Source: Saccostrea cucullata
Lineage: Eukaryota
Assembly (NCBI RefSeq): GCF_032062105.1
Contig: NW_026941129.1
Span: forward strand, 62,001 to 126,000
DNA length: 64,000 nucleotides
Direction: 5' to 3'
Every line of letters starts with the position of its first letter. Within the stretch, counting starts at the first letter, position 1. Positions 2,273 through 46,421 of this stretch are shown piece by piece. The translations under genes and the position numbers were made by a program. The notes under the pieces were generated by a model. It searched no databases and was not told where the DNA came from. It saw only the letters and a list, made by a program, of their open reading frames with translations.

Positions 2273-5200
2273 CAAATGGATCTGCGTCTAATTTTAAGAA
2301 GACTGCCTTTACTACATTGTGTACATATTTTGTATACGACTCCATAAAACCTATTTGAGTATTTCTTTTGTTGCTCAGGTGAGTGATGTGGCTCATTGGA
2401 CATTTGTTTTACTAGCTACCTTAATTTCTAAAATAATAATGAAATGTTGAAGAATTTCATTCCTTTTTTCAATACTTGCAGTTGTATAATGTATTTTTCA
2501 ATTTTTTTTTACATCATTTATATTTTTTTCAAGGGATGACCTACCTAAACTGGTAAAACGCAAGTTAAAGAAAACAGGAGTGAAAGAGAGTCCTAACGAA
2601 AAAAAATGGAAAGAAAAAACAGGAGGAGAATTTGTTGGGAGTGCAAAAAGGATCATTTGTCTGGATGAAGAGGGTGATGTCAGAGAGTTTTCAGAGGAAA
2701 CAGCAGAAACTGAAGTTGAGACCATTAGTCTTGATGAATATGATAAAGAGCAAACTGTTGGAGAGATTTCTGATATATATGGGCCTTTGTCATCTGATGA
2801 AGAAGAAAATGTAACAGAATTCTTTAAAGACTTTCCAATTTTCTCAAGAAAAATTGGTGGATATGGAGCTGCAGAAATCATCGATGTTCTGATGAAAGTA
2901 GACAACTATACTCAATATGTATGTCCAACTGTTCCTTTACAGTGTGAAGAGAATGCCACTTTCTTTTGATCAGTTGATACTGATAAACTGAGAAAATTTT
3001 CAGATCTGACTGTGGATGACAATGGGCTCTGGAAAAGGCCATCAGGATCAAATTTGTATCTTACAAAGACAGAACGAGGTTATAAGTCCAGCAGACAAAT
3101 TACTCAATCATATGATTTTCAGCTCAGGAAAAGCTACTATGTCCATGCTGGGACTCCAGATTTCCACAAAATTGTCTACACTATAAGAAACTCAGAAGTA
3201 CACAACCTCAGACATGCAATTATACAGTATTATTTCCAAGATGGAAAAGTTGTTCCTGTCTTAAAAAATGTTCCACATGGAAATTCTAAGAAAGAAAATC
3301 CTTTCATTAGAACAAAACCAAGTGCAATTGCAGAAATGAAGAACAAATCTGTTTATATGCAGCCCAAGAAAGTTGTTGCAGATGTGTTCAATGAGAAAGG
3401 AGGATCGTTGAACTTCAAATCACCATCAGATATACCTAGAGACAGAACTCAAATTTACAACATTAACAGAAGCAACCCTAGAAAATACCAGACTGGTGGA
3501 AAATGTACTACTAATTTTGATGCCATTATCAAGATGTCTGTTGAGGGCAATTTTGCTCGAAGTTTTGAAATGAAAGAAAATGGTCATGCCAGGTGCTTCC
3601 TTGCAACAGATCAGCAACTCCTTGGTGTGAAAAAATTTTGCTGCAGTTCAGATTCCATTTTAGGCATAGATCAAACATTTGATCTTGGAGGATTTTACCT
3701 TACATGTACCACTTACAGACACCCTATGTTTGTCATCAGAGATAGTGGCAGACACCCTCTTTTACTCGGTCCATGTATGATGCATCTTAAACGAGAAACC
3801 AGTGACTATGAATACTTCGGCAAAACACTCTCTGGATATATTAAAGATGACGTTGTAAATGTATGGGGATCAGATGGAGAAAAAGCCCTCATAAATGGCC
3901 TTCAAAAAAGTAACGCTTTTCAAGGAATCCATCTAATTTGTGAGATACATGCCCGAGAAAACTGTGAAAGAAAGCTTAAGTCATTAAACTTTAAAGAACC
4001 TCACATAAATTTATTTTTGAATGAGATATATGGACAGCAGCATGGGAACAAACGCATTGGAGGGCTCATTGACTGTGAAACAGAGGCTGATTTTGATTCA
4101 TCCCTCATCAATTTGGGCAGGAAGTGGGATGCAATTGAAGTTACCGAAACTGGAAGAAAACCCCCTGAGTTTTTTACTTGGTTCAAGAAATTCAAAGCCG
4201 AAGAGTGTAAAAGAAACCTTTTAAAACCAATCAGAACAGCAGCAGGGCTAGGATTTCCTCCTATAAGATATACAAACAACAACAACGAGGCAATTAATAG
4301 TGTGCTGAAGCGTGAAGTTGACTATAAAAAACAGTCCTGGGAGAACATGGCGGTGTCTCTGCAAAACATTATCCACACTCAGTATCAAGAATTGGAGAAA
4401 GGAGTGTTCAATGTTGGGGAATATAGGCTGCATAAGGATTATAATCATCTCTCCGTATCAACACTTAACTGGTCTCAGTTAAACAAAGACCAAAAACAGG
4501 ACAAGCTTGCCAAAGTATTCAGGTATAATGCAGAAGTTACTGAATTGCCAACTCACCATATACCTTCAGTCCTTTCCGAAACATACAATTCCCTGACTGG
4601 TACGATCTACAAAGCTCATGAACTAAGAGATGTCTGGAGAAAAGCAGGTCTTCTTGCAGGAGACAAGTCCATATTCACTAAACTTTCATCAAACAAAACA
4701 TGTATAGACTGTAGTGAAAATGTGTACATTGTAGAGGGAAATGAAGAAATGGATTGGTTTACATGTACTTGCACTGGGAGTCACAAATGTCAGAACTTTG
4801 ATAAGTTTGGAGTATTCTGTGAACACACTATTGCAGCAAGTGAATTCCGGGGATCTTTGCAAAAGTATATACAAGAAATTAAAAAGTGTTCTGAAAAAGT
4901 GTCTCTTGATGCCCTGCTTGAGAAACATACCAAGAAATCTGGGAAAAAAGGGTCCAGAAAGGGAAAAAATGATCCCCATACCAGACCTGTGATTACATCA
5001 TCAGTGCCACTTTTCACTGAACCTTTCCACAATGAGGATGAATTTGAAGTAAATTTCCTAAAAGATGAAAAAAGAGCCAAAAGATGTGCTGCATGTGGTG
5101 TAGATTTTCCAAAATCTGTAGTAGTTCAACCATTTGATCTTGTAATGCAGCATCCAGAGCGATACCTATATCCGCAGAAAAACCAAGGTGAAACTGAATG

Positions 5201-6436
5201 GGTGTACACAGCTCAAAAAAAGAGAGCCACATTCTATCACTGTGCGCCAGAGTGCATTCTAAAGCGACATCCCCATTTCACAATTGATAAAATAAAGATT
5301 CCTGAAAATGTTAGATCTAAACTGAAGCCATGCCACATAAAAATGCTCCAGTCTCATTTTAACATGGATTTGTAAGGCACTGTAATCAACTAAAAATTTT
5401 GTTCTGTATATAACGTTCTGATTTACTTTTAATTGAAAATGCTTTTCTTTGTTATAGAATTCTTGTTTTATTACTAATTCAGAAGGACACAAGATTGATA
5501 TTTTTTACTCTTGCAGTTTTATTTCTTGTGACAAGACTGTCTTTGGGAATGGTTACTATGAACTAAGAATCTAGTCAATCTGATGTAAACTTTATGTTGC
5601 TCAAAACAAAGTTATGTTTGTATTTTTTGTTCTCTTTGTTTGGATAAGATTTTTGTGCTTTTTTTCTTTTTTGGCAATGTTTGGTTTATCATAAATAAAA
5701 GAGAAAGTTTAAATGCTTGTGGGTTTTTTTTTTATTCTTGGTCTGTAATTAATAATACACTGGTTTTATCAATTTTCATTGGCATCAATTTTTGTGCTAT
5801 CAGCAAATGATTCAGTATTTAGATCATCATAAAACTTTTGATATGCTTCTTACTTTAACGAACATCTAATTCTACTTTAATTTTCACTCTGCAAAACACA
5901 AAAATTAATGTTAAAGGAATGTTGATGGAACCCAATGTACATGTATTTTGATATTGGGAATTTTAATGACAGAGATGAGTGGTTGAGAAGACTACAATAC
6001 AGGAGAGGACAAATAGATCTCTAAGGCACTTTTCCAAGGGCAAGTACATATAGTAAAAATTCACTTGCCCTACCTAATTTGTTGCCCTACCATAAATAAT
6101 ACTGTAGTTATAAATATTTCAAAATAGGAAGACAAATACTAAGTAGATCATGTAGGCCCATATGCCCAGCTGTAACTAAAGCCCCCCCCCCCCTTCTTCA
6201 AATAAAGACGGTAATTTTAGTAATAGAATTATCTATAATATGTAACAAGGAATCTTTGTCAAACATAGATACCAATGTATTGCAGCTTATTGTCCTAATA
6301 ATTAAGTCTCTTAAAAGGAGGTTAAACTCAACAGTCTAGGGTCTTTCTGTAACACCAGTAAACTTTTGTCTTACATAAAGAAAATTTATAAAAACCAAAG
6401 CACTAAATATTTTTTAAATGCTATTAATGTTTGGAG

Positions 6437-6471
<35 letters not shown>

Positions 6472-6729
6472 TCGAAAGTAGGTAAATATTTATGGATCCA
6501 CCTAACAAAAAAATACAATCGGGTTCGGGCTGTCGACTTGAGTATAAGCGATAATGCTTAAATAAAGAAAATCCAGGTCATCTGAGTGTTTTAATACAGG
6601 GAGAAAATACTTTTGTGATATTGGGACGAGATTGACGCGCTGGTGCGCCGACGCGCCGAATACAATTAGCCGAAAAATACTTAAGCAGTTGGGAATTGAA
6701 ACTTTATAACAGCAAAAAATAGAATAATG

Positions 6730-7714
6730 ATCCTTGATTAAGTCTTTCTATGTTCTTAGTGTAGTCTACTTGCATGCTACATTATATTATAATCAGACTA
6801 AAACCGTATTTGAGTGGTATTTTGAAAGTATTAAACAGAAATTTCTATTTTTAGTAACCAAAGGCAATGATATTCATCGAAGTCTAAAACTGATACACAG
6901 AATTGTGTATCTTAGTGTAGTCTACTTGTGTGCAAACCTACATTGAAATCAGTCCAAAACTGTAGGAGACGTAGCATTTTAAAAGAATTTCACAGAAATT
7001 TCTATTTTTAGCAACCACGGCAACACTGTTCATCGAAATCAAAAACCGATACACAGAATTGTGTATCTTAGTTAAGTCTATTAAGTATTTGTGTGCCAAG
7101 TTATATTGAAATCAGTCCAAAACTGTAGGAGGAGTAGCATTTTGAAAGAATTTCACGGAAATTTCTATTCTTAGTAACCACGGCAACACCGTTTATCGAA
7201 ATCAAAAACCGATATACAGAATTATGTATCTTAGTGTAGTCTACTTGTGTGCCAAGTTATATTGAAATCAGTCCAAACTGTAGGAGAAGTAGCATTTTGA
7301 AAGAATTTCACAGAAATTTCTATTTTTAGTAAGCATGGCAACACTGTTCATCGAAATCAAAAACCGATACATAGAATTATGTATCTTAGTGTAGTCTACT
7401 TGTGTGCCAAGTTATATTGAAATTAGACCAAAACTGTAGGAGGAGTAGCATTTTGAAAGAATTTCACAGAAATTTCTATTTTTAGTAACCAGGGCAACAC
7501 CGTTCATCGAAATCAAAAAACCGATATACAGAATTATGTGTCTTAGTGTAGTCTACTTGTGTGCCAAGTTATACTGAAATTAGACCAAAACTGTAGGAGG
7601 AGTAGCATTTTGAAAAATTGTTTACAGACAGACAGACAGACGGACGGACGGACGCCGGACGCATTACTATCGCATTTATAAGCTCTTCTGGTCTCTGACC
7701 AGTAGAGCTAAAAA
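6730..7714 (+). mobile_element. HINE/pearl-like (Helentron-associated) element with ~6 x 155-bp core tandem repeats
   Basis: Unit 'cttagtgtagtctacttgtgtgccaagttatattgaaatcagtccaaaactgtagg...' recurs at ~155-165 bp spacing, followed by (GACA)n(GACG)n at 7626-7660, a terminal hairpin ctcttctggtc-tct-gaccagtagag and an A-run. Confidence 0.8.
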
Positions 7715-7794
7715 TTACAAAACATAAATTCCAGATTTTTTCCCCATCAAATTGGTTTTAGAAGAGGTGTATAAATCCATATATAGACATTTAA

Positions 7795-8718
7795 GGTAGG
7801 ACACAATAGATAGGCCAAATTTTTCCTCAAATTCAATTTTTCTGAAACTTTGATATTTTGTTCTAGGACACTAAATCTCTCTTAATACATAATATGAAAG
7901 AAATTCATCCGCACATATTTTGCCCACATTGTCTGAAATATGGCCTATCAGACCCCTGTAGGACTTGACAATGAGCCTTATTTTAGAATCATTAATTGAT
8001 CTATTGCAAGTTTGTGTTATAATTTTGATCAATATAACCTTTTTGTTACTTTAACTTAGTAAGTCATATTGATACTGGACGATTTGAGAAAAATGTTAAG
8101 TAAAAATAGAACATACATAGCGTCGGAATTGAAAATGCACATGTAAATATCCTACACTTAAAGTTTTCCAAAGAAAAAATGTATAATTCAATTTTTGCAA
8201 AAAATTAACAGAATGGTTAAAATGGGTCCCAGAAAAAAATATGTAAAAATAAAGAAAATTGAACCGGTGGTTTCTGATGTTTTGGCGATTAAAAAAATTC
8301 AAATGGCAAAAAAAAATACAAGATTCAGTAGATGACGTCACAATATTTGACCTTTGACCTCTTGATATGACCTTGACCTTTAGAGTACACAAAGAACAGA
8401 GACACCTTATATCTGTGTCCAAATATAAGCCCTCTACTTTTTATTGAACAAAAGTTACACTGCATTTTATATCAGACTGTTACATGCTTGTTTATTGCAC
8501 TTAGATAGCGTAAACACATTCCAAAATGTAAAGTCCCAAGTGACCAACATATAGGATTCTCTGATTTTTTCACAAAATATGACGCAATCATGACAAAACT
8601 TGTTATTTTTCTTACAGGGGTCATTCATTGTTGTCAATGTAGTAATATTATTCTTTTTTTTCTCCAGTATTTTTTAAGAAATTAGTAAAAATAGAATCCA
8701 AGGGTGTTTTGTACTACC
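7795..8718. mobile_element. Non-autonomous TTAA-targeting DNA transposon (Kolobok-type)
   Basis: TTAA at 7791-7794 and 8719-8722; TIR GGTAGGACACAA / TTTTGTACTACC (2 mismatches); RR termini; no ORF. Confidence 0.7.
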
Positions 8719-8799
8719 TTAAAGTATGGCACACTGGTCCTTCATTTAGTGGAACTCTTCAACTCCAGGGAAGAACCCAATAATGTTCAAACTACGTTG

Positions 8800-8945
8800 T
8801 GTATGATTTAAGGTCATATACGAAAGACCCATGACTTTCACCTCTAATGCCGAGCGCTTAGCGAAGGAACAGTCTCTACCTTGTTTACGTCTTACGTTTG
8901 ACGCGGCGCCGAGAATCGAACCCGGGCCTCCCGATTACGAAGCGT
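8800..8945 (-). mobile_element. tRNA-derived SINE fragment
   Basis: gagaatcgaacccgggcctccc is the reverse complement of a Pol III B-box (GGTTCGATTC); the same motif occurs at 46603-46623. Confidence 0.55.
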
Positions 8946-9271
8946 TATGGCTATGGATAATGTTTAAAAGATAGTTTTGGTAAAAGAGGGGCTCAAATTC
9001 CAAAGTTTAGGTCACGAGGTCAAATTGCATGGCACCCAAAGAGAGGTCTTGTCACAAGGAATACACCTGTGGAATATATGATCCATCCATTATGTTATGG
9101 ACAAAGTTAACGTTTTTGCAGACGAACATATAAACATGCAAACAGACAGACGGACAAAACCTATATATCACCGAATTTTCGATTACGGGAACATAAAGAA
9201 TAAAGACTAATATTATTTTATGCTTGTGCTCTATTGCATATGTGTCTCGATCAAAACATACATGCCATGTA

Positions 9272-12200
9272 CCTTCAAACACTCTATTGCTGACCAGTTT
9301 GGCGTAGTCTCCGGTGACTCGAGGTGACGATGTTTCTATGTACTTGTAGTAGGTACCGGCTTTAGCGCCATCAGGACCGGTGTTAACAGAACCAGTCGGT
9401 CCCTGTAAATTGGAGGACAAATATCAACTATAATCGTATACATGTATATGTACTAACAAGGCGCACCGAAAGTATTCAGTGGAGTTTCATTTATGCGGAC
9501 GCTTTGTTCCTAGTCAATTTATCCCGATATGTGAAGCGTCTGGATACCTAAATTACCAGTTAAATAAGACAAAATAACATTAAACAAGATGTGTTTGTGA
9601 AACACTATGCGCCCGGCGGCAAACAAATTTCAAAGAAACTATTTTTAGCATATAGGTCACTTTGAAGGTCATGGTCATTGACCTTGGTATCATTTGAAAG
9701 AAATCGATTTGTTAAATACGCATACCAAATATACGCATACCAAATATGAAGTCTCTATCTCTCATGTTAGAAGTTAAAAGTTATGGTGAAGGTTCAAAAA
9801 ACTATTTTTAGCATATAGGTCACAGTCAAGGTCACAAAGTCATTGACCTTGGTGACATTTGAAAGAGCTTTATTAGTGGAATACAGTGTATGCATACCAA
9901 ATATGAAGTCTCTACCTTTCATGGTTAAAAAGTTATGGCGAAGGATAAAGTTTGCAGACAGACAGACAAACAGTCGGACGGGACAAAAAAAAATATACGT
10001 CCCGGATCTATCGATACGGGCGCATACAAATTCCGTTCCGACGAAAAATCGTCCGAATACTGAAGCGCCATGATATCTGAAGGTCCACTGTATTTAAACC
10101 CTTAGGTTTTGTGTACACATGACCGTGGGAAGCGAGGGAGCGGCACTGGGCTCCGTGTCCTCAATAATCTTGCCGATATAAAGTTAAATGTGTACTATAG
10201 ATAACATACAGTATACTTTAGAAAATACATAGTAATACTATAGAAAAGACTGCTGCCATATGCTTGTGTTCCCTTAATCAAAACGTCTGATGACTTCTTT
10301 TTTTTTATTTTGCTTGTTAAAGAATATTTCAATTGGTAGCTCCAACTGATATATATGGCTCCCCCCACCCCTTAGATAAAATTGTTTTGTAACTTAACTT
10401 AAAAAATTACAACATAATAAGGTACTAGTTTACATGTTGAACATTTTGCATCCGACTCCCCTTATATTAATAAATTCATAATTTACAACATGATGAAATT
10501 TCAACATTCTTCAGATGATTATTTACCAATTTCCTCATCCAGTTGAAAATATCATCTGTTGCCTCTGTCAGAAAACACGATGGTTCTGGAGCTATCTCAA
10601 AGTCACACAGATCTAGAAATTGACAAAGAAGTATAAAGTTCTCTTAAAATATTGATGAAACATCCATTACAATCGGATCGATTGATTTTATGTTGTTTAA
10701 CAATTTTCACTTATATGTAGACGTCAGCACTCGCCGATGGAAAGCTACAAATTTTGTCCTTTATTCGGTACTCAAGGCGATCGAGCACTGTGGAACTTTT
10801 TCGTGCCAGTACCTACTGCGATACGGGACCTCGCTTTATACGCTCTCACCCGATTGGCGAAGGATCGGTCTCAACGTCCCCCAGTGGGATTCGACGGTTT
10901 GGACCTCGAACGTAAAGATTGATTAATTGATTGTATACTGTTTAACGTCCCTCTTCAGAATATTTCACTGATATGGAGACGTCACCATTGCCGGTGAAGG
11001 GCTGCAAATTTAGGCCTTTGCTCGGCACTTAGGGCCTTTGAGCAGGGAGGGATCTTTATCGTGCCAGACCTGCTGTGACACGTGGCCTCGGTTTATACCG
11101 TCTCATCCGAAGGACCGCCCCGTTTAGTCGCCTTTTTCGACAAGCAAGGGGTACTGAGGACCTATTCTAACCCGGATCCCCACGGGGACGTAAGGATTTC
11201 AATCCTTACCTCGCGACTTCGGAACAGCCTCTCTTACCTGTGCCCCACGCGGGCGATCATATATAATCGGGAACTACAACCTAAACTCTATACATGTAAT
11301 ATATTTATAAAGCTTTACTACATTAAAAGGTCCAGTATGAGAAGAAACTCATGAAATTAGGGAAATAAAAATCCTAGCTGTGACCAAATTGTGTTTGCCA
11401 TACAATCATGTAATAATTAAGGTAGGATTACCCTGTCAACAAGTTTTAGTTATATGTGTATGCTACATTGTATTATCTTTGTAGGTCCAAATTTGAAGCA
11501 AGTTATGGCGGATCTTGCTGTAAGGGTTTTAATTTATTTTTGGGTGGGGGTCTCGATCCCTTCTGGGTTTTTTTCAGGGTACTAGAAGAAAAAAAACATG
11601 TATATTATTATAGAATTAAACTATAATATAAGCAAAGAAAATATAACCTGGCTTCTCCGTCTTCCATTTTTTTCTAAGTGTACGATTTCGGTACGGAATC
11701 CCCCCCCCCCTCCTTCGGAAACTATTTCCTCTATTAGATGTTAATGTAGTCCTTGCATAGTTACTAATTGTGAAGGGTATGTGAGCATGTACGTACCATA
11801 CACATGTAGGTCGCCATTTTTTCCACTGTTTTATCTATGGGTAACTTATACGGTAACTACCACATAAATTATAAAGTTAGGATGATATCTTATTAATGAT
11901 TAATATATGAAAAAACATGTGTATTTGTGTAATAGATTTTGTCCGTGATCTTCATTCTAAATGTGGAAATCTACCAGCATATTTGAGTTCATCTCATAAT
12001 ATGCGTCGTTATCTAAGCTCTATATATCCTTTGATTATATGTCATCATTCACCTCCTTTTTGTGAAAAATTAATAAATGAGATAAGCCGGAATTTATTTA
12101 TCCATCCATGCAGTGTCAGTACGTAGTTACTAGGTTTACGGGTTATCTCCCCTTTTCTATGCATCAATGAAAGTGAAAGGTGGGTGATGAAAGTATCCGA

Positions 12201-15200
12201 TTTATTTTTCTGTATTATGAAATATTTTTTAATAATTTCCAGTTTTTAAAGTTAAGTTTCTGTCAAAGAATTAACATGGATTATCTTATCAACATTGATA
12301 TTGCTCGATGGCAAATATTTCATTGGATTGAAACAGATGGATTTGCCTCCCGTCCATACTTTAAACACTGGCACATGGTACAAGATACACAAGTATGGTA
12401 ATAATAACCAACTTCATCAGTATATTTTGAATGAGGAAAAACGTACTTAGTGAAATATTATTTAAACAAAATGAGCTAATCTAAAAATAGGTTTGAAATT
12501 CAACTTTATTCGGTCCGTGTTATTCAAGGTCATTGGTCAAACATCCGTACACATGGTAGCCTATATTTAGATACTTAGTTCCCTTGGCCTATCTTTAGGG
12601 GGTTTAGAAATGGGAATATGCATAGTTATAATTCTTACAATATGGGGATGGGTTATTTTGTAACTTCGGGCTTGTTGTATTTATCAGTTTATCAGTCAAA
12701 ATATTTTGTGACATAAAAAACTTTTCCTTAAAACAGTGAATAAATAGAAAACATACAGATTGAAAATAAATTAAAGTTTGATAAAGCTATTGTATCATGT
12801 CTTTAGAAATGTTATTTACCCTGATTCACATAGGAACAGAACTCTAATTAAAGGATATAAATTTTCAATCAAGGCCATTCAACCTAAACAATGGTCCAAA
12901 GAGAGGCTTGGAAGGTATAGAATTGCAACAAAGGCAGTAATCAATTGTGAAATAAAATAATTTGAAGTAAAATAAAGAACAAATTGTGGTGCTTTTGAAT
13001 GTTAATTGTTATATTACAATTAATGCATTTTTATGTATATGAATTTAACATGAAATAAGATGTGTATTTGTTTATACATATTTACAGTTGTACATGTACA
13101 CATGCTATGACAAAACTCAAGGTAAGTAAATATGAATGATGACTAAATAGATTTTGAGTAATCAGTTGCACGGAAGCATTGCAATGAACAATTCAGGCTG
13201 TTAAAGCTGGGGGCATAGGTTCTATGCACCCAAGTTGAATTGTACATTGTCTGTCAAATCTACATATTAATAGTTATATTAGGACCAGCAGCATCCTCAT
13301 CTATTCGGATATCTCTTCTCTTAGGGGGCTTGAAAAGGGGGACAGCTTCAGACTCAACCAGAATAATAACAATGTGCATAGTAATTTAGGGCCTCAATGG
13401 TTCACTAGTTGATATAGATAGGATTTCCCGAATTTTATTTTAATTAAGTACATGTAGAGTCCTTGTATAGGGGACAAATTAAAACAAAATGAAATTCATC
13501 TTCTATGGTATTTTTACAAAATTCACAAATAGACAGGATTTCCCGAATTTTATTTTAATTAAGTACATGTAGATATCTATTGTCTAGCAAGTCTAGCTAT
13601 TATTTTGCTGGTTAATATATGTATATATAAGTCTTCAGATTAAGTAAGAGGGGGGTCAAAGGCTTGTTTCACATATATATTCTGTGTTGACATTTTGATT
13701 TGGTTCAAGTTATAAATAAAGGAAATAAATGAAGGTCAGGCTGTTTGAACATTCGGAAGCCGTCTTCAGTGTATATGAACATAATTATGAATTTTTCTAA
13801 CAGGGCCTGTACCTTATTTGAGCAGGTTTGTTGATATCATGATAACACAATAAAGACACATACATTTAATGCCTTCTCACCCCTTAACTGCATAAAGGCC
13901 TTGTATCTTATATAGTTGTGTTTAGTAAATGAAAAGTTTTGTACTATCTTAAGTTAACATGAAAATCAGGTAAACTTATTTTACTCAATTCATTATATAC
14001 ACTATTCCAAAAATGTCGATAATTCACACAGAGATAAATTTCAGCACGGGCTTTTATTTCCCGTCAATGTTCTTTAAGACTTATACAAGAAAAATCTTTA
14101 GGTATTTAAATATAATTCTACAAATAAAAGACTATTATAAATAAATAATAATAATTGATAGGCTAATCTTGTCAAAATTATTAGGAAATTAACATTTATT
14201 CCTTTGAGTTATCTTTCTCATCAGGGAAAGTGAACCTCAAAATAGGAAATGCAACTTCAAGTCCCTGAACTTTTACCAGTTTTAATCAAGTAATTCAGTT
14301 TCAGAAAGGGATGAGGGACAAATTACAGAGTTCTTTAGGTGCTAAAGTCAATGCAGACTCATTTGAATAAGGTTCGCAGTGCTGGTCTTTCTAATAGATG
14401 TATTTTCCTTATGGCATATGCTGTATGAATGGTCAAAATAATAAATAAATAAACAAATAAATAAAATAAAGAGGGTTTATAATGAAACTTCCAGTATAAG
14501 GTTTAAAATAGGGCTTAAATTTTTGTCAGTGTTGGCTTTTGCTGTGTCTCTAAGTTATTAGATAAAAAAGGATTTGCTATTTTCACACAGATAAAACTTG
14601 CTTCAGTTAAAATTCTATATTCACAGATTTTAAACTCAAAAAGGATAAATTGTTTAGGTAACTTGCTTTATTCATGTGGAGTTATAAGATTTAAAAATAA
14701 ATAAATAAATAAATAAGATGAAAGAACCGCATAAGGCGAGATTTCCTAACAGCATAGATATACAAATTCGGGGATGGGGGGGGGGGGGGGTGTTAGATAC
14801 ATTTTATACCACAGGCTAGATTATAATCTGACCCATTTCCTACAATATTTTCTTTTTTATAGTAGGCGCTTACTGTTAGCTTACACATTTGCATATTTTA
14901 GGGGCATTTCTTCATTGAAAATATCAGTTCAAACCCAGTTGCCATTCGCAGGTATTAATATGGTATGTGTTTATCCCTCATCTCATGTGAGCAGTTAGCA
15001 GAATTATTTTCTGTTTACACATTTATCTTGTATGGGATCAAGATGCATTAGTCGGTGCATAATTGCATATGTACATGTAAATTACATCCATGCATCAGCT
15101 AATGGGTACAAATACAGGTTACTCCTACATGTATAAGAGCCCCAGTTAACGGCCCTATGCTCCTTATGTACCTCGGAGCCAAGTCAAAAGTATCTCGTTG

Positions 15201-18200
15201 TGAACCTCTAGCATGCTGGAGTAAAATATAGGTTAGCTAGGGGATATAAATACAAATCCACAAGTGAGTAGGAGTTAACTTTTCATAGTGCTAAGATTAA
15301 ATAAACTTCGACAGCATTTTAGGGTATTATAGAAAGGATAGGTTTACACTAATTTAGCATATTAATTTTCATGCTCTCTATCATAAAGCTATTTTTTACA
15401 GCCTTAAAAATAATTTTGAAGTTTATAATTTTAATAACCCATTCCACAGCATATTTTTGCAGGAGGAAAGGGGGAGGGGTCCCTCCCCAAAATTCCCAAC
15501 GTAGGAAGCTTAAGGTGTAGTACGATCATGCCTATTTGATAGAGTATTAGCTGGAAAGGGATTTAGAATGAAGGTTTTAGTCATATGTGCCTTACATGTC
15601 TGGTGCAGTCCATCCACATTAACAAATGCTTAGGGGTAAATACAAAGTACATGTACCCTATTGTGTTTCTTGGCTTCAAAGGTAAATAGTATATACAAGA
15701 TTTAATCAATTTTACATGGTCTTCGGAAGAGCTTGGATTAAAAAATAAAGTAGTACTTAGATAAGCTCATTTCTACAGAACTGGCAAGATACGTTACAAA
15801 ATATCACAAAATATGTTCTGCACTTGACAGAGTTGGAATATGAACACTTAAAATTATTCTACAATACAGGAACAACTTAATCATCCTTAAGGGGGGGGGG
15901 GGGGGGGGGGGTAGAGAGTATAGGTGCTCATCTCATTCATCTTGTTTGTAATCTTTGCAGGAAAGTATATTACAAATTTTTCTTTCAAATTACCTAAAAA
16001 TGAATAAGAAATAAAATTCAAATGAATAAACCAATAAATAAAAAAGGAGGGATAAATCTAGTTAAGACATATTTTCACTTTATATTCTTACATTAGTCCA
16101 GTTAGTTCTTTCTTTCTGACTGAGTAAAATAGCTGGATATTAATAATAGAAATAGAGACCCAAAGCAATACAACTTCGAAAGATATAAAATCAGGGAAAA
16201 GGGGGGGGGGGGGGTAAGGCACGGTAAATTTGAAGGGTAACCAGATTTATTTTAATGCAGCATAAATCTACAGTGGGTTGGATATGAGAGAGAGTGATGT
16301 TCACGACGGATGGGTTGCTGAGGGTTTTGAGTAGGCTAGGAGTCCATGGTGGGTGATTAAATTGAAGTTGCCTACCCCCACCAGGTGGCGGTGGGCACCT
16401 ACGGTGCCCATGTGGCGAAATCGTCACCTTCAATTTAACCATTGAACTGTTGATTTTGTTGACTTTTTGGGGTTGATGTTGATATAAGTGATGATTGATG
16501 TTGATATATGTGATGTTGACTTTGAAAATTATATCTTATATAATGTAAATCTAAAGCAAAATAATATAATTAAAAGACAATTTGTGTTGAAATGTGTCCG
16601 TAGCACGAATGAGGTCAACCCAGCGTGCTACTTTTCCCGTCAGGGAGGGCACAACTTATGTTGATGTTGGGGGTATGCCATTTTGCCGGCTGCCCCACTG
16701 TTGTGTAGACCACTGTGGACAATACCTGCCAACTCGAATAAAACATTAAACTTAAATACTTAGCATTTGTTTATTATATATAGGTCTTTGATAATACCGC
16801 ATATTTGAGTTCATCTCATAATATGCGTCGTTATCTAAGCTCTATATATCCTTTGATTATATGTCATCATTCACCTCCTTTTTGTGAAAAATTAATAAAT
16901 GAGATAAGCCGGAATTTATTTATCCATCCATGCAGTGTCAGTACGTAGTTACTAGGTTTACGGGTTATCTCCCCTTTTCTATGCATCAATGAAAGTGAAA
17001 GGTGGGTGATGAAAGTATCCGATTTATTTTTCTGTATTATGAAATACCCTCCCACCTCAACCCTTGAGCTAGGTGTTAAGTATTACTCTTTCTCCTTTTG
17101 TTTGTTTAATTTACGTATACATTGTTTTTCATGGGTTAGGTATAGCCAATTTATTAAAGTTATGGAAATTTTATTGAGAATCTTTTTCTGCTGTGTGGTT
17201 TTGTTTTTGTCTTTTCAGGTATTAAGAGATTTCGTTGAAGGAGACTGACGGTGCTGATCAGGATTGCCCGCTATTTCCGTTTTCTAGGACCTTTGGAATG
17301 ATCTCTGACCAAATACCATGCGTGACAGGTGTCAACTTGGCGATTTATCCATGATTTCAAGGAGCTCGGGGAAAGACAGTAGACTATACTTCACAGTGGT
17401 CGTATTGGCGAAATCGTCACCTTCAATTTAACCATTGAACTGTTGATTTTGTTGACTTTTTGTGGTTGATGTTGATATAAGTGATGATTGATGTTGATAT
17501 ATGTGATGTTGACTTTGAAAATTATATCTTATATAATGTAAATCTAAAGCAAAATAATATAATTAAAAGACAATTTGTGTTGAAATGTGTCCGTAGCACG
17601 AATGAGGTCAACCCAGCGTGCTACTTTTCCCGTCAGGGAGGGCACAACTTATGTTGATGTTGGGGGTATGCCATTTTGCCGGCTGCCCCACTGTTGTGTA
17701 GACCACTGTGGACAATACCTGCCAACTCGAATAAAACATTAAACTTAAATACTTAGCATTTGTTTATTATATATAGGTCTTTGATAAGAAAGGCATTTGG
17801 GGCATGACCCCTCCCACCCCCTTTCCATTTGTTTTCTTTTTAAATCTGAGGTGGGCACACCTTTTTCCAATTTTGGTAGTTTAATAAGCATTACTTTATA
17901 TCGATTATGTAACCCTTTTGATACCAGGTAGATTTAAAAAGGAAAAAAATAAAAGGCGTGGGGGGGGGGGGGTTACAGCCCCCAAAGTGCCCTGTCAACA
18001 TCTCTAAAATTGATGAAGCGTCCAACATACATATTTTTTAATAATCTTTTTTTCTTTGTACGATCATTTGTTTTAAATTGAATTTGTTTATTTATCAATT
18101 ATAATTATTAATGTAATTTACACTTATTCTGTCCTTACCACTCTATACTGCTGACATGTGCCCCCGCTGCCCGAATCTGTAAAAGTAGGATCCCATCCCT

Positions 18201-18471
18201 TCACAAATCTACAATACTCCGCTCCGCCGGATTCACAAACCTCTACCGCCTGACATTCCAGATTTCCTAAACATCTACCAGAACAATGGCCGATCACGGA
18301 GCCGGGAAATGTCGTTATAGTCTCGTAGGTACGAGTGTTGAACGCCTCCGGTACATCTTTGTCATATAACAGAGATGTACAATCCTCGGCCTTACAGCTC
18401 AATAGAACACTAAGAAGAAATAGTGGAAATAAAATCTTAATATTAAGTGCCCTCATTTTAGACGTGGGCAA
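9272..18471 (-). CDS. Secreted PAN/apple-like + MAM domain protein (partial)
   Basis: Exon ~18139-18471: signal peptide plus PAN-like Cys pattern (CSGRCLGNLECQAVEVC...YCRF). Exon ~10527-10612: DLCDFEIAPEPSCFL...DDIFNWMR (MAM start). Exon ~9273-9404: GPTGSVNTGPDGAKAGTYYKYIETSSPR...AKLVS (MAM). The exon1-exon2 phase link and 3' exons are not resolved. Confidence 0.65.
9581..10030 (+). mobile_element. HINE/Helentron-like non-autonomous element
   Basis: Starts aacaagatgtgtttgtgaaacac, has ggtcaaggtca core repeats, a (GACA)n/(GACG) tract and terminal hairpin cccggatctatcgatacggg. A related fragment lies at ~8975-9200. Confidence 0.65.
10680..11257 (-). mobile_element. Nested SINEs: inner copy 10921-11187 inside an older related copy
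   Basis: Two homologous bodies (acgtcaccattgccggtgaagggctgcaaattt.../acgtcagcactcgccgatggaaagctacaaattt...). The inner copy has a (GATT)n tail and is flanked by acgtaaagatt (10910-10920) and acgtaaggatt (11188-11198). Confidence 0.7.
11972..17787. mobile_element. Non-coding element with split direct repeats A1...B1-A2-unique-B2 (non-autonomous PAT/Ngaro-like tyrosine-recombinase retroelement candidate)
   Basis: A1 11977-12224 matches A2 16799-17046 (248 bp, identical by eye). B1 16413-16794 matches B2 17406-17787 (382 bp, one substitution seen). B1 and A2 are joined by TACC. No long ORFs. Confidence 0.6.
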
Positions 18472-31151: not shown

Positions 31152-32266
31152 TTAATTAATTTTGTATCCAGAGAAGTAATTGAAAAGGCCTCCATTAATA
31201 AATTTTGCCTTAACATGATTTTTGATCCACACCCTGTTTCCTTTCTTTAGCTCGGTAACAAAGTGACCCGTTGTAGAGATGTAGTCGGCTTGTTGATTCA
31301 CAATGCAGGTTCGAACACGTTCTTTACCATCAACCATAAGATAAGGATAAACAGTTCCACCCTTTAAGGACACGAATAACCAATCTAAAGAGTAAAGACC
31401 ATCCACCGGTGCTGTAAAAATCCCTGTTTTCGGATCGTATCCTTTGCCCTTGTTCAACTGGACGTTGTCAAATTTTATGACCGTGTTTGCAGGAACATTA
31501 TTGAGATGATTTTTGAAATTGGCATGAAAGGCGATTATCTCGGCAAAAGGAGCTAAATTAAATATAATCTCTGTTATCAAAACTACACAAACATGCACAT
31601 TAAACGCAAAATCAAAGTCAATTAAAGACAATAGACTATTTTCTTCGAATTATTATCATTATGTGCTGTGATAATGCATCTACATAAATAATATTGACTA
31701 AAAATGAAAAGTAAATTAAAATATTATATCATAACTATTATCTTATTTAACTTGGTTGTAATTTTTAATCAAAAGAGTGAAGCCTTTCCTGTAAATATAT
31801 CAATTTTAAATATCCATGCATTATACACAAAAAGTCTTTAAAACAAATTCAAGTAATTGTGAAAGCTTAAAAACCGCAGAAATTCAAATTTGCAAAGGTC
31901 AGAATTCTGCTTTTTTTTAATGTAAAATATAATTTATAATCGAAACCACCGGCCAATTTACTTAAACAAGTGACGCATATACATGTACTATATGTTCCGT
32001 GCTTAATATATGTAAAAACTAATGAAATTGTATCTTAGTCTAATAACTGAATGTTGATAATATTCTGTTAGTTAATTGTTGATTAATATGCTATCGGGAA
32101 AAAAAAAAAACCTTAGTACTATACCTTTCCTTTCTTTACAAGTTAGTCGTTGACAAACTTTCATGTAACTGTCGTAGTCTTTGATGAATGCAGTTGGAGG
32201 GGATGGATCGGCCAAGGAACTGGTCAGCAACAGGACAAGAACGTTCACAAAAAAGATAGATATCAT
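31152..32266 (-). CDS. Secreted globular-head C1q domain-containing protein
   Basis: Exon 32125-32266 (signal peptide MISIFFVNVLVLLLTSSLA) and exon 31152-31552 (IAFHA...IKFDNVQLNKGKGYDPKTGIFTAPVDGLY...ELKKGNRVWI...FSGYKI); phase-1 intron; no collagen repeat. Confidence 0.92.
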
Positions 32267-44872: not shown

Positions 44873-46421
44873 ATGGCCACAGTTTTGCTACTACTGTCCA
44901 CTTTGATATGGGCTGTAAACTGTTCGCATCTCTCCAACACGATAGAGGATTACCAGGCATTGACCAACAGATTACTGGCTAACTACTCAAGTAAGATCAG
45001 GCCTATCTGGGATCAAGGCCAGAGCCTCCCTATACAAGTCAGTATGTGGGTGGCTAGTATCAATGACGTCAATGATGTCGCTCAGAAGATGGTAACCACG
45101 GCATACTTGTACGTCACGTGGACAGACGCCATGTTGACTTGGAATTCCACGGAAACAGGGATTTATTGGATGCAGTTTAATCAGGTTAATTTTTTCTGGT
45201 GAAATAAAATTTATATACGAAAAAAGTCTGAATTAAAAATATGATATAGTCTATGTTCTAAATTTTCCACGGTGATGCACTGCTTTTATAAGAATAAAAA
45301 GAACTTAATTTGTACTAGTGGTCAAAAACTGAAACCCTAAAGCTTTTGAATTTGATAATGAAATTTACGCGTTCTTTCATCGATTTCCTCTAAATGAGAA
45401 ATGAGCCCAAACTAATTATACTAGGTAAAAAACTACAGACTAGTTTACATGTACCTGCATAATATTGATTATGAAAAGTACATTTTATGTTCTCTTTCAG
45501 AAAGATTTATGGATACCAGACCTGGTGCTGAGTAATGGATTCACGGCCTTCAAACCTCTGGGTGGTGATTTCTATTATCTTTACGTGGGCAGCGATGGAT
45601 CAGTGTCTTGGTATCCCTACATGGTGTTTGAATCCAAGTGTAAACTCGATGTCTCATTTTATCCTTTTGACTCGCAAACATGTAAAATCCAGTTCAAAAG
45701 TTGGAGCTATAGCCAGTGGGAAGTAAATCTAACTATTTCTGATGAGAAGATTGGGTTTTACGATTTTGTGGAAAACACCGTATGGGAAGTGACGTCAACA
45801 GATGCAGTAAATGAAGATGCAAACAATGAACCGACAGTTGCATTTATAATTCATCTCCAGAGAAAATCTTTATATTATATCATGAATGTGTTTCTTCCTA
45901 TAATTTTTCTGGGTATACTCAGTCCCGTGGTATTCATTATCCCAGCTGATGCCGGAGAGAAAATGGGTTACGCCGTCACGATATTTCTGACCTTTGTCGT
46001 GTTTCTAACTATTGTAAGTTCGAACCTTCCAGTTAATTCTGACAGTGTTTCGTACATGGCAGTTTACCTCCTCATCAAGCTTATGTTTGGTGCCATGATA
46101 ATCGTCATAACGTCAATACAATTACGAATCAACCACAGGAAGTCAGAAAGGGAAATTGGGAAAGTGTTCCAGGGTCTAGTTAGGCTGGAGCGTCGTCTGC
46201 GATGTGCAGGTCAAAGATCGGGCTCGGGCTGCGCATGCTCAGGACGTGTACAGGGAATAGACCTTCCGGTTATGGCGGACAAAGGAAAGGCAGAGGCCAT
46301 TGAGGAGGATATAAGCTGGAATGACGTGTCTTCTGCCATTGACTTTTATTCCTTTTGGTTCCTTGTCTTTGCAGATATAACAGTTACTTCCTCCATATTT
46401 ACATATACTGCGTTAAATTAG
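44873..46421 (+). CDS. Cys-loop ligand-gated ion channel, nAChR-like non-alpha subunit, 2 exons
   Basis: Exons 44873-45184 and 45501-46421; signal peptide, YSSKIRP, WTDAMLTW, LWIPDL, Cys-loop CKLDVSFYPFDSQTC, four TM segments, GEK before M2; no vicinal Cys in loop C. Confidence 0.93.

What the first reader, a model, noticed from the sequence alone, without database searches (positions are those of the whole stretch)
11972..17787. 5.8-kb ORF-less element with split direct repeats (A1...B1-A2-unique-B2): candidate non-autonomous tyrosine-recombinase retroelement
Seen: 248-bp A at 11977 and 16799; 382-bp B at 16413 and 17406; repeats almost identical; B1 and A2 joined (tttgataa|taccgcat) so the internal junction reproduces right end plus left end (A1 starts taccagcat); 359 bp unique between A2 and B2; 4.2-kb AT-rich interior with no gag/RT/RH/YR; no TSD seen. 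Established: this order is the hallmark of PAT/Ngaro-type DIRS-order elements and non-autonomous TOC1, which are thought to replicate through a circle and integrate by tyrosine recombinase. Inference: a young, large, non-coding parasite of such an element in a mollusc intron, possibly an undescribed family. Alternative: a rearranged DNA transposon, since B ends in a P-like ...tatatataggtctttg and TE-like sequence may extend left of A1.
Basis: partly seen in the sequence, partly recalled or inferred. Interest (0 to 1): 0.8.

Follow-up and report, generated by a model that had tools for sequence, protein, structure and literature searches.

The report
Gene-less split-repeat retrotransposon family, oyster
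This 5.8-kb stretch is one recent copy of a gene-less mobile element, present about 86 times in the genome, built like tyrosine-recombinase (Ngaro/PAT-type) retrotransposons; it must borrow its enzymes from coding relatives, so it is a new family of a known kind of parasite DNA.

Summary
A (252 bp) and B (382 bp) stand in the order A1, 4.19-kb interior, B1|A2, 359-bp unique stretch, B2. No ORF exceeds 83 aa.

It is not single-copy. The 27-nt B1|A2 junction occurs 86 times in the genome (control 0). At least 27 copies have different flanks, and homology always stops at TACCGC... on the left and ...TTTGATAA on the right.

There is no target-site duplication. The left flank ends in ATA(A/T) in about 25 of 27 sites, matching the element's own 3' ATAA. 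That is the mark of site-specific integration of a circle junction.

A1/A2 and B1/B2 of one copy share lineage-specific variants along their length, as LTRs do, so each pair comes from one template per cycle.

The genome holds intact Ngaro elements (RT, tyrosine recombinase, GDSL hydrolase) with the same architecture. One of them has the same kind of flank signature.

I did not find the autonomous partner, and I found no RNA, circle or empty-site evidence.

Verdict: a young, non-autonomous split-direct-repeat (DIRS-order, probably Ngaro-type) retroelement family, comparable to TOC1. It is a new member of a known kind. An earlier scan note reports a similar 7.4-kb gene-less family in this genome.

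The parts
11972..12224 (+). A1, left terminal repeat (253 bp here; 1-nt insertion at its 5' end relative to other copies)
11975..12005 (+). Hairpin-forming inverted repeat 3 nt inside A (12-bp stem). The same sequence lies in A2 at 16798-16827.
   Evidence: MFE -12.9 kcal/mol, z = -4.0 against shuffles. A hairpin in the same position is seen in the Ngaro element of L064 (z = -4.5).
12225..16412 (+). Interior X: 4.19 kb, about 32% GC, non-coding (longest ORF 83 aa). It is the fastest-evolving part (91-93% identity between subfamilies).
13414..13573 (+). 115-bp tandem duplication private to the window copy
   Evidence: (D3)
16413..16794 (+). B1, internal copy of the right terminal repeat. B is the most conserved part of the family (98.9% between subfamilies). 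It contains AATAAA at 16737-16742.
16783..16809 (+). B1|A2 junction (...TTTGATAA|TACCGC...), identical to right end plus left end, i.e. an internal copy of the presumed circle junction
   Evidence: 86 genomic hits, control 0
16795..17046 (+). A2, internal copy of the left terminal repeat
17047..17405 (+). Unique spacer u between A2 and B2 (359 bp; 95% conserved between subfamilies)
   Evidence: the intact Ngaro in L063 has a comparable 388-bp spacer
17406..17787 (+). B2, right terminal repeat, ending ...TTTGATAA

Best explanation
The stretch is one recent insertion of a non-autonomous split-direct-repeat retroelement of the DIRS order. It is most likely derived from, and mobilised by, Ngaro-type elements of this genome.

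Proposed cycle:
1. The element is transcribed from the + strand.
2. Reverse transcriptase supplied in trans makes cDNA.
3. The internal B1|A2 copy serves as the template or splint that restores and joins the two ends. A new copy's two A's and two B's therefore descend from single templates.
4. The joined B2|A1 junction is recombined by a trans-supplied tyrosine recombinase with a genomic ATA(A/T) site, without a target-site duplication.

Shown here: the architecture, the copy number, the exact boundaries, the lack of a TSD, the target motif, the concerted repeats, the lack of coding capacity, and the presence of intact Ngaro machinery in the genome.

Inferred: the RNA intermediate, the circle, the trans-mobilisation and the identity of the helper.
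For: (1) The A1-X-B1A2-u-B2 order is conserved in all 23 copies for which both halves were paired. B1A2-u-B2 was found full-length at 31 places and A1+X at more than 30 places. The junction 27-mer occurs 86 times.

(2) There are 27 unique left flanks and 26 unique right flanks, all unrelated to one another. Flank positions -4 to -2 are ATA in 25-27 of 27 sites and -1 is A or T in 25 of 27. The element ends in ATAA. There is no TSD. [quoted passage not shown]

(3) Concerted repeats. Within-copy A1/A2 differences average 1.1 against 8.2 between copies. There are 120 copy-sites where both A's share a minority variant against 25 private ones. Variants seen in a single lineage but present in both repeats span A positions 2-195 and B positions 52-352.

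(4) The permuted form (B|A followed by X) is absent in 30 of 30 A1-X hits.

(5) A-u-B 'solo' forms of about 997 bp exist, like the solo AB repeats of Cafeteria Ngaros (PMC8547959).

(6) Constraint pattern between subfamilies: B 98.9%, A 95.7%, u 95.1%, X 91-93% identity. The repeats and the spacer, not the interior, are the conserved parts.

(7) The same genome holds an intact Ngaro element (L063) with RVT_1, Phage_integrase and a GDSL hydrolase, in the order A1-ORFs-B1A2-388 bp-B2. Its left flank ends AAT, as does its B. Three further families show B1...B2 downstream of the hydrolase ORF, with B ends ...GATAAT(T)...AATAAT and ...AAATAA. At least 97 YR-domain hits and at least 150 hydrolase hits were found, many with open frames.

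(8) The published definition of split direct repeats is A1-[ORFs]-B1A2B2 (PMC4157794, PMC8547959).
Against: - No coding element sharing A, B, u or the junction was found. None of the 97 YR hits or 150 hydrolase hits lies on a contig with a junction. Four sampled Ngaro families share no DNA similarity with this family.
- No clean empty site was recovered.
- Homogenisation over nearly the whole of A and B is more than the simple 'restore the missing tips' model predicts. It needs an RNA that starts near the A1/X border and ends near the u/B2 border, or template switching between the repeats.
- The only protein-level link is weak: hydrolase residues 122-145 against a frame of B, 12 of 24 identical, E = 0.027.
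Confidence: 0.8

Rival explanations
1. A non-autonomous DNA element moved purely at the DNA level by a tyrosine recombinase (Crypton-like, or an excising and integrating circle), with no reverse transcription.
For: Integration without a TSD at a short motif shared with the element's end is what any YR-mediated circle integration gives. No RNA evidence was obtained.
Against: Excision and integration would not keep A1=A2 and B1=B2 identical within lineages. It also gives no role to an internal copy of the junction. Cryptons are described as lacking long terminal repeats and having only short direct repeats (PMC13465315). The copy number (86) and the many near-identical copies point to replicative spread.
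Confidence: 0.07
2. Two related elements sharing ends A and B, a 4.8-kb one (A-X-B) and a 1-kb one (A-u-B), lying head to tail and transposing together. An example would be a Helitron-like rolling-circle read-through product.
For: The layout is formally A-X-B followed by A-u-B. A-u-B units exist alone. Insertion occurs without a TSD between A/T and mostly T.
Against: The termini are TA... and ...ATAA, not 5'-TC and CTRR-3', and no 3' subterminal hairpin was seen by eye at the B end (no fold was run there). All 30 best A1-X hits carry the composite order and none shows the reverse order. Rolling-circle copying does not explain variants shared by A1 and A2 of one copy but absent from other copies.
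Confidence: 0.05
3. A rearranged LTR-retrotransposon derivative (LARD-like) whose LTR is B+A, integrated by a DDE integrase.
For: B+A behaves like an LTR in being homogenised each cycle. B starts with TG.
Against: There is no 4-6-bp TSD and no TG...CA ends at the insertion boundaries. The outer ends fall in the middle of the 'LTR', between B and A, in all 27 sites. No tRNA or PBS match was found.
Confidence: 0.04
4. An assembly artefact or a local segmental duplication.
For: Some loci are duplicated with the same flanks (C22781/C7780; C12529 twice plus C14909; C22216/C8607), which points to haplotigs in a 1.17-Gb assembly.
Against: The same arrangement occurs at 27 or more independent loci with unrelated flanks on different contigs.
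Confidence: 0.01

Closest known systems
TOC1 of Chlamydomonas reinhardtii (non-autonomous DIRS-order element; Day et al. 1988, as cited in PMC9940879)
   Same: Non-coding and about 5.7 kb. From my own knowledge of Day et al. 1988 (not re-read here), it has part of the repeat at the left end, a complete internal B+A, a short unique stretch, then the other part of the repeat at the right end. It depends on coding relatives.
   Different: Different kingdom and no sequence relation. TOC1's relatives (TOC3) are PAT-like and carry a methyltransferase. Here the likely helpers are Ngaro-type elements with a GDSL hydrolase. The unique spacer is 359 bp here.
Ngaro elements (DrNgaro, Cafeteria Ngaros; PMC8547959, PMC4157794) and the intact Ngaro of this genome (L063)
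   Same: A1-[interior]-B1A2-(spacer)-B2 order. No TSD. A short A/T-rich motif is shared by the target and the B end. Solo forms exist. A hairpin lies at the start of A in at least one local family (L064).
   Different: This family has no RT/RH, YR or hydrolase ORF. It has no nucleotide similarity to the four local Ngaro families sampled.
The 7.4-kb gene-less Ngaro-type element reported earlier in this scan for the same genome (s1-700746)
   Same: Same genome, the same kind of split-direct-repeat element without ORFs, and the same conclusion.
   Different: Different length (7.4 kb against 5.7 kb) and presumably a different family. I could not compare the sequences.
SIRE/VIPER of trypanosomes (PMC6681497; PMC7192593)
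   Same: A short non-coding element associated with a tyrosine-recombinase retroelement that has A1...B1A2B2 repeats.
   Different: I did not open PMC6681497. The SIRE-VIPER relation and SIRE's short length are from my own knowledge. This family keeps the whole repeat architecture and a 4.2-kb interior.

Membership tests
DIRS order, split-direct-repeat type (PAT-like / Ngaro) | Terminal and internal repeats in the order A1 ... B1A2 ... B2, with A1=A2 and B1=B2 | tested here: met
   conserved in all 23 paired copies
DIRS order, split-direct-repeat type (PAT-like / Ngaro) | The internal B1|A2 junction equals right end plus left end (a copy of the circle junction) | tested here: met
   ends TACCGC... 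and ...TTTGATAA; junction ...TTTGATAA|TACCGC... in 86 copies
DIRS order, split-direct-repeat type (PAT-like / Ngaro) | Integration without a target-site duplication, at a short motif also present at the element's end | tested here: met
   (27 left and 26 right unique flanks); the control Ngaro L063 shows AAT/AAT; literature PMC7192593
DIRS order, split-direct-repeat type (PAT-like / Ngaro) | Encodes RT/RNase H and a tyrosine recombinase | tested here: not met
   No ORF exceeds 83 aa. tblastn with the local Ngaro RT, YR and hydrolase gives nothing below E = 0.027. Pfam finds nothing. It can therefore only be a non-autonomous derivative.
DIRS order, split-direct-repeat type (PAT-like / Ngaro) | An autonomous partner sharing the cis sequences | tested here: inconclusive
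   None was found among 97 YR hits, 150 hydrolase hits and 4 sampled families.
DIRS order, split-direct-repeat type (PAT-like / Ngaro) | Replication through RNA and cDNA | not testable with these tools
Indirect support comes from the LTR-like concerted repeats.
Ngaro as opposed to PAT-like/DIRS1 | No methyltransferase domain; some members carry a hydrolase | tested here: inconclusive
   The element is non-coding. The only hint is a weak hydrolase-like stretch in B (E = 0.027). Local coding SDR elements are Ngaro-type with a GDSL hydrolase.
Helitron | 5'-TC and CTRR-3' ends, a 3' subterminal hairpin, insertion between A and T | tested here: not met
   The ends are TACC... and ...GATAA. The only strong hairpin is at the 5' start of A.
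LTR retrotransposon / LARD | Identical LTRs at both ends with TG...CA, a 4-6-bp TSD and a PBS | tested here: not met

The most novel reading that the evidence does not exclude
The family may share no terminal sequence with any coding element of the genome. In that case it would be mobilised by an unrelated Ngaro family through a minimal signal: the ATAA(T)-type core at the B end plus a hairpin at the start of A, both seen in several local Ngaro families. That would be cross-mobilisation by structure rather than by sequence identity. The full-length homogenisation of A and B would then report a replication scheme in which the RNA carries only one copy of each repeat.
Probability: 0.2. Interest if true: 0.55.

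Novelty: new member of a known kind. Interest (0 to 1): 0.3.

Why it matters
Tyrosine-recombinase retrotransposons are the least understood retroelements. Their priming, their circle formation and their integration specificity are still models.

This family is young, homogeneous and non-coding, with 86 copies, exact ends, a clear ATA(A/T) target and measurable concerted evolution of both repeat pairs. That makes it a clean natural reporter for three questions:
- Which sequences are needed in cis. B is the most conserved part, then A and u.
- How the ends are rebuilt from the internal junction.
- Which recombinase specificity is used.

For genome annotation, it is a 5.7-kb repeat that ORF-based and LTR/TIR-based tools will miss or misclassify.

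Tried and rejected
(1) A 17-mer variant of the junction (ending ...CGCAC) has 13 hits, in pairs 6.73 kb apart, and looked like a coding relative. After fetching it (L062), it proved to be a chance match inside the 610-bp LTR of an unrelated LTR retrotransposon with a 1672-aa ORF. There is no other homology.

(2) Partner hunt.
- PF00589 hits (97) and Ngaro-hydrolase hits (150) were compared by contig with the 86 junction hits. None is co-located.
- Four coding Ngaro families were fetched wholly or in part (L063-L066). They have the same architecture but no similarity to A, B, u or X.

(3) Empty sites.
- The window flanks hit only a diverged paralogous region, C19500.
- The haplotig of the C909 copy also carries the insertion.
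- The C15337 flank is represented only once.
- Joining flanks in silico found only one uninterrupted relative, for C15112 against a repeat in L054 at 66% identity. It is collinear across the site but too diverged to fix single bases.

There is no expression, circle or polymorphism evidence.

(5) Exact-protein look-ups of three small ORFs of the element found nothing. An HMMER search of the 58-aa B ORF against 1.84 billion proteins found only one 37-aa peptide.

(6) Rfam, tRNA and tandem-repeat scans of the element gave nothing relevant.

(7) A longer copy, C22857 (L061), is the same family with a 3.8-kb nested insertion and is not a coding version.

Majority bases were used only to count variants.
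Full report
**Observation**

- A1 is at 11972-12224 and A2 at 16795-17046 (252 bp). The window's A1 has one extra base near its 5' end.
- B1 is at 16413-16794 and B2 at 17406-17787 (382 bp, one mismatch).
- B1 abuts A2 directly (...TTTGATAA|TACCGCAT...).
- The unique stretch between A2 and B2 is 359 bp (17047-17405).
- The interior (12225-16412, 4188 bp) is about 30-35% GC and has no ORF above 83 aa.

**It is a dispersed family with fixed outer ends**

In the window's own genome (1.17 Gb, 23,869 contigs), B1-A2-u-B2 is found full-length at 31 places, and A1 plus the first 1.2 kb of interior at more than 30 places. The 27-nt junction occurs 86 times, against 0 for the reversed control.

I paired the left and right halves for 23 copies. 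All have the same order and nearly the same length, about 5.67-5.71 kb. The window copy is 5816 bp, mainly because of a private 115-bp tandem duplication at 13414-13573.

Homology between copies stops exactly at TACCGCATATTTGAG... on the left and ...GGTCTTTGATAA on the right. There are 27 different left flanks and 26 different right flanks, none related to another. A few loci share flanks (C22781/C7780; C12529 twice plus C14909; C22216/C8607). I take these for haplotigs or segmental duplicates.

The copies form two age classes. Nine to eleven copies are about 99.5-100% identical to the window copy. An older set is about 91-93% identical in the interior.

**Integration signature**

There is no target-site duplication. 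The left flank ends in ATA at positions -4 to -2 in 25-27 of 27 sites, followed by A or T in 25 of 27. The element itself ends in ATAA. The first base of the right flank is T in 14 of 26 sites. The target therefore resembles the junction core ATAA|T, and the element sits exactly after ATA(W).

An intact Ngaro of the same genome (L063) shows the same signature with a different motif. Its left flank ends ...AAT and its B ends ...AAT. The window copy is the one clear exception (flank ...AATC, A1 starting TACCAGC). I read that as an imprecise event or a later mutation.

**The repeats evolve in concert**

Across the 23 paired copies, A1 and A2 of one copy differ at 1.1 sites on average. A repeats of different copies differ at 8.2 sites. 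There are 120 copy-sites where both A's of a copy share a minority variant, against 25 private ones.

Variants seen in one lineage only, yet present in both repeats of that copy, run from A position 2 to 195 and from B position 52 to 352. So each new copy receives both A's, and both B's, from a single template, as LTRs do.

A cut-and-paste DNA element or a tandem pair of elements would not behave this way. The result fits replication in which the terminal repeats are rebuilt from the internal B1A2 copy. In DIRS-1 the left repeat lies upstream of the transcription start and the internal complementary region is essential to restore the ends (PMC7192593).

One caveat applies. Homogenisation over almost the whole of A and B exceeds what 'restoring short missing tips' predicts. 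Either the RNA starts near the A1/X border and ends near the u/B2 border, or reverse transcriptase switches between the repeats. I could not test this.

**Further structural points**

- The permuted order (B|A followed by X) was not seen in 30 of 30 A1-X hits. Integration therefore uses the end-derived junction, not the identical internal one.
- A-u-B units of about 997 bp exist alone, preceded by the same ATAA-type flank. They resemble the solo AB repeats of Cafeteria Ngaros (PMC8547959).
- Between the young and old subfamilies, B is 98.9% identical, A 95.7%, u 95.1% and X 91-93%. The cis-acting parts are therefore B, A and u, while X drifts.
- A 12-bp-stem hairpin starts 3 nt into A (z = -4.0). 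A hairpin in the same position is present in one local Ngaro family, L064 (z = -4.5), and weaker inverted repeats occur in three others.

**Coding capacity and the helper**

The family is non-coding. Pfam, tblastn with local Ngaro proteins, and a search of 1.84 billion proteins with the largest B ORF gave nothing useful. The only hint is a 24-residue match of a frame of B to the Ngaro hydrolase (12 of 24 identical, E = 0.027). I count this as inconclusive.

The genome is rich in possible helpers.
- At least 97 tyrosine-recombinase hits score above the Pfam cut-off, many in open frames of 320-400 aa.
- At least 150 hits to the Ngaro GDSL hydrolase fall in several identity tiers.
- L063 is an intact element. 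It has RVT_1, Phage_integrase with its SAM-like N-domain, and a GDSL hydrolase. Its order is A1-ORFs-B1A2-388 bp-B2.
- Three more families show B1...B2 just downstream of the hydrolase ORF, with B ends ...GATAAT(T)...AATAAT and ...AAATAA. These are the same A/T-rich type of core as ...GATAA here.

None of these shares nucleotide similarity with this family. No recombinase or hydrolase hit lies on a contig that holds the junction. The helper is therefore not identified.

**Rivals**

- A DNA-only recombinase element does not explain the concerted repeats or the internal junction.
- A Helitron-like or tandem composite fails the Helitron end rules and also fails to explain the concerted repeats.
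- A LARD-like LTR derivative fails on the TSD and the end positions.
- An artefact is excluded by 27 independent loci.

**Comparison with what is known**

The layout is the published definition of split direct repeats of PAT-like, Ngaro and VIPER elements (PMC4157794, PMC8547959, PMC13465315). A non-coding element of this layout is known from Chlamydomonas, TOC1, called a non-autonomous DIRS retrotransposon in PMC9940879.

An earlier follow-up in this scan (s1-700746) reported a 7.4-kb gene-less Ngaro-type element in the same genome, which it calls an oyster. I did not verify the species. I confirmed only that coding Ngaro elements exist here.

This is therefore a new family of a known kind. 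It works like an Ngaro or PAT element. It fails the 'encodes RT and YR' criterion, so it can only be filed as a non-autonomous derivative.

**Limits**

- The 'intron' location was not tested. The nearest ORF is a 115-aa signal-peptide ORF on the minus strand at 18124-18471, about 340 bp from B2.

Noticed in passing
window 17790-17993: A palindromic MITE-like repeat of about 200 bp lies 3 bp after B2 (arms 17808-17847 and 17930-17969). Hundreds of genomic copies occur in both orientations. It gives weak miRNA-precursor-like Rfam hits far below the gathering score.
   Followed up: partly
window 3012-5375 (+): A 787-aa ORF with no Pfam family at E <= 0.01. It is the longest ORF of the window.
   Followed up: partly
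window 31152-31631 (-) and 45465-46421 (+): A C1q-domain ORF, and an exon-sized ORF of a Cys-loop ligand-gated ion channel (Neur_chan_LBD plus Neur_chan_memb).
   Followed up: no
L063 (G000:C12352:19300-28900), element about 4029-9477: An intact Ngaro-type element: RT 4182-6095, YR 6017-6958, GDSL-like hydrolase 7031-7618. Repeats are A at 4006-4202 and 8325-8519, and B at 7779-8347 and 8908-9477. At least 12 near-identical genomic copies of the hydrolase ORF (97-99% identity) suggest current activity.
   Followed up: partly
L062 (G000:C15512:37600-45600): An LTR retrotransposon with 610-bp LTRs (202-804 and 6929-7538, 98.5% identical) and a 1672-aa ORF on the minus strand. Its LTR contains a chance 17-nt match to the junction of the family studied here.
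   Followed up: partly
L042 1453-1500 (left flank of the C149 copy): The 48 bp upstream of this copy's A1 resemble the last 46 bp of B (about 69% identity). This may be an insertion next to an old B end or junction-like site, or chance in AT-rich DNA.
   Followed up: no
G000:C10952:14993 and 15966: Two junction motifs lie 973 bp apart on one strand, giving a B|A-u-B|A arrangement. This is what unequal crossing-over or integration into a resident junction would produce.
   Followed up: no
L061 rc 2953-6765 (G000:C22857): A 3.8-kb nested insertion of another repeat sits inside the interior of an older copy (85-88% identical) of this family.
   Followed up: partly
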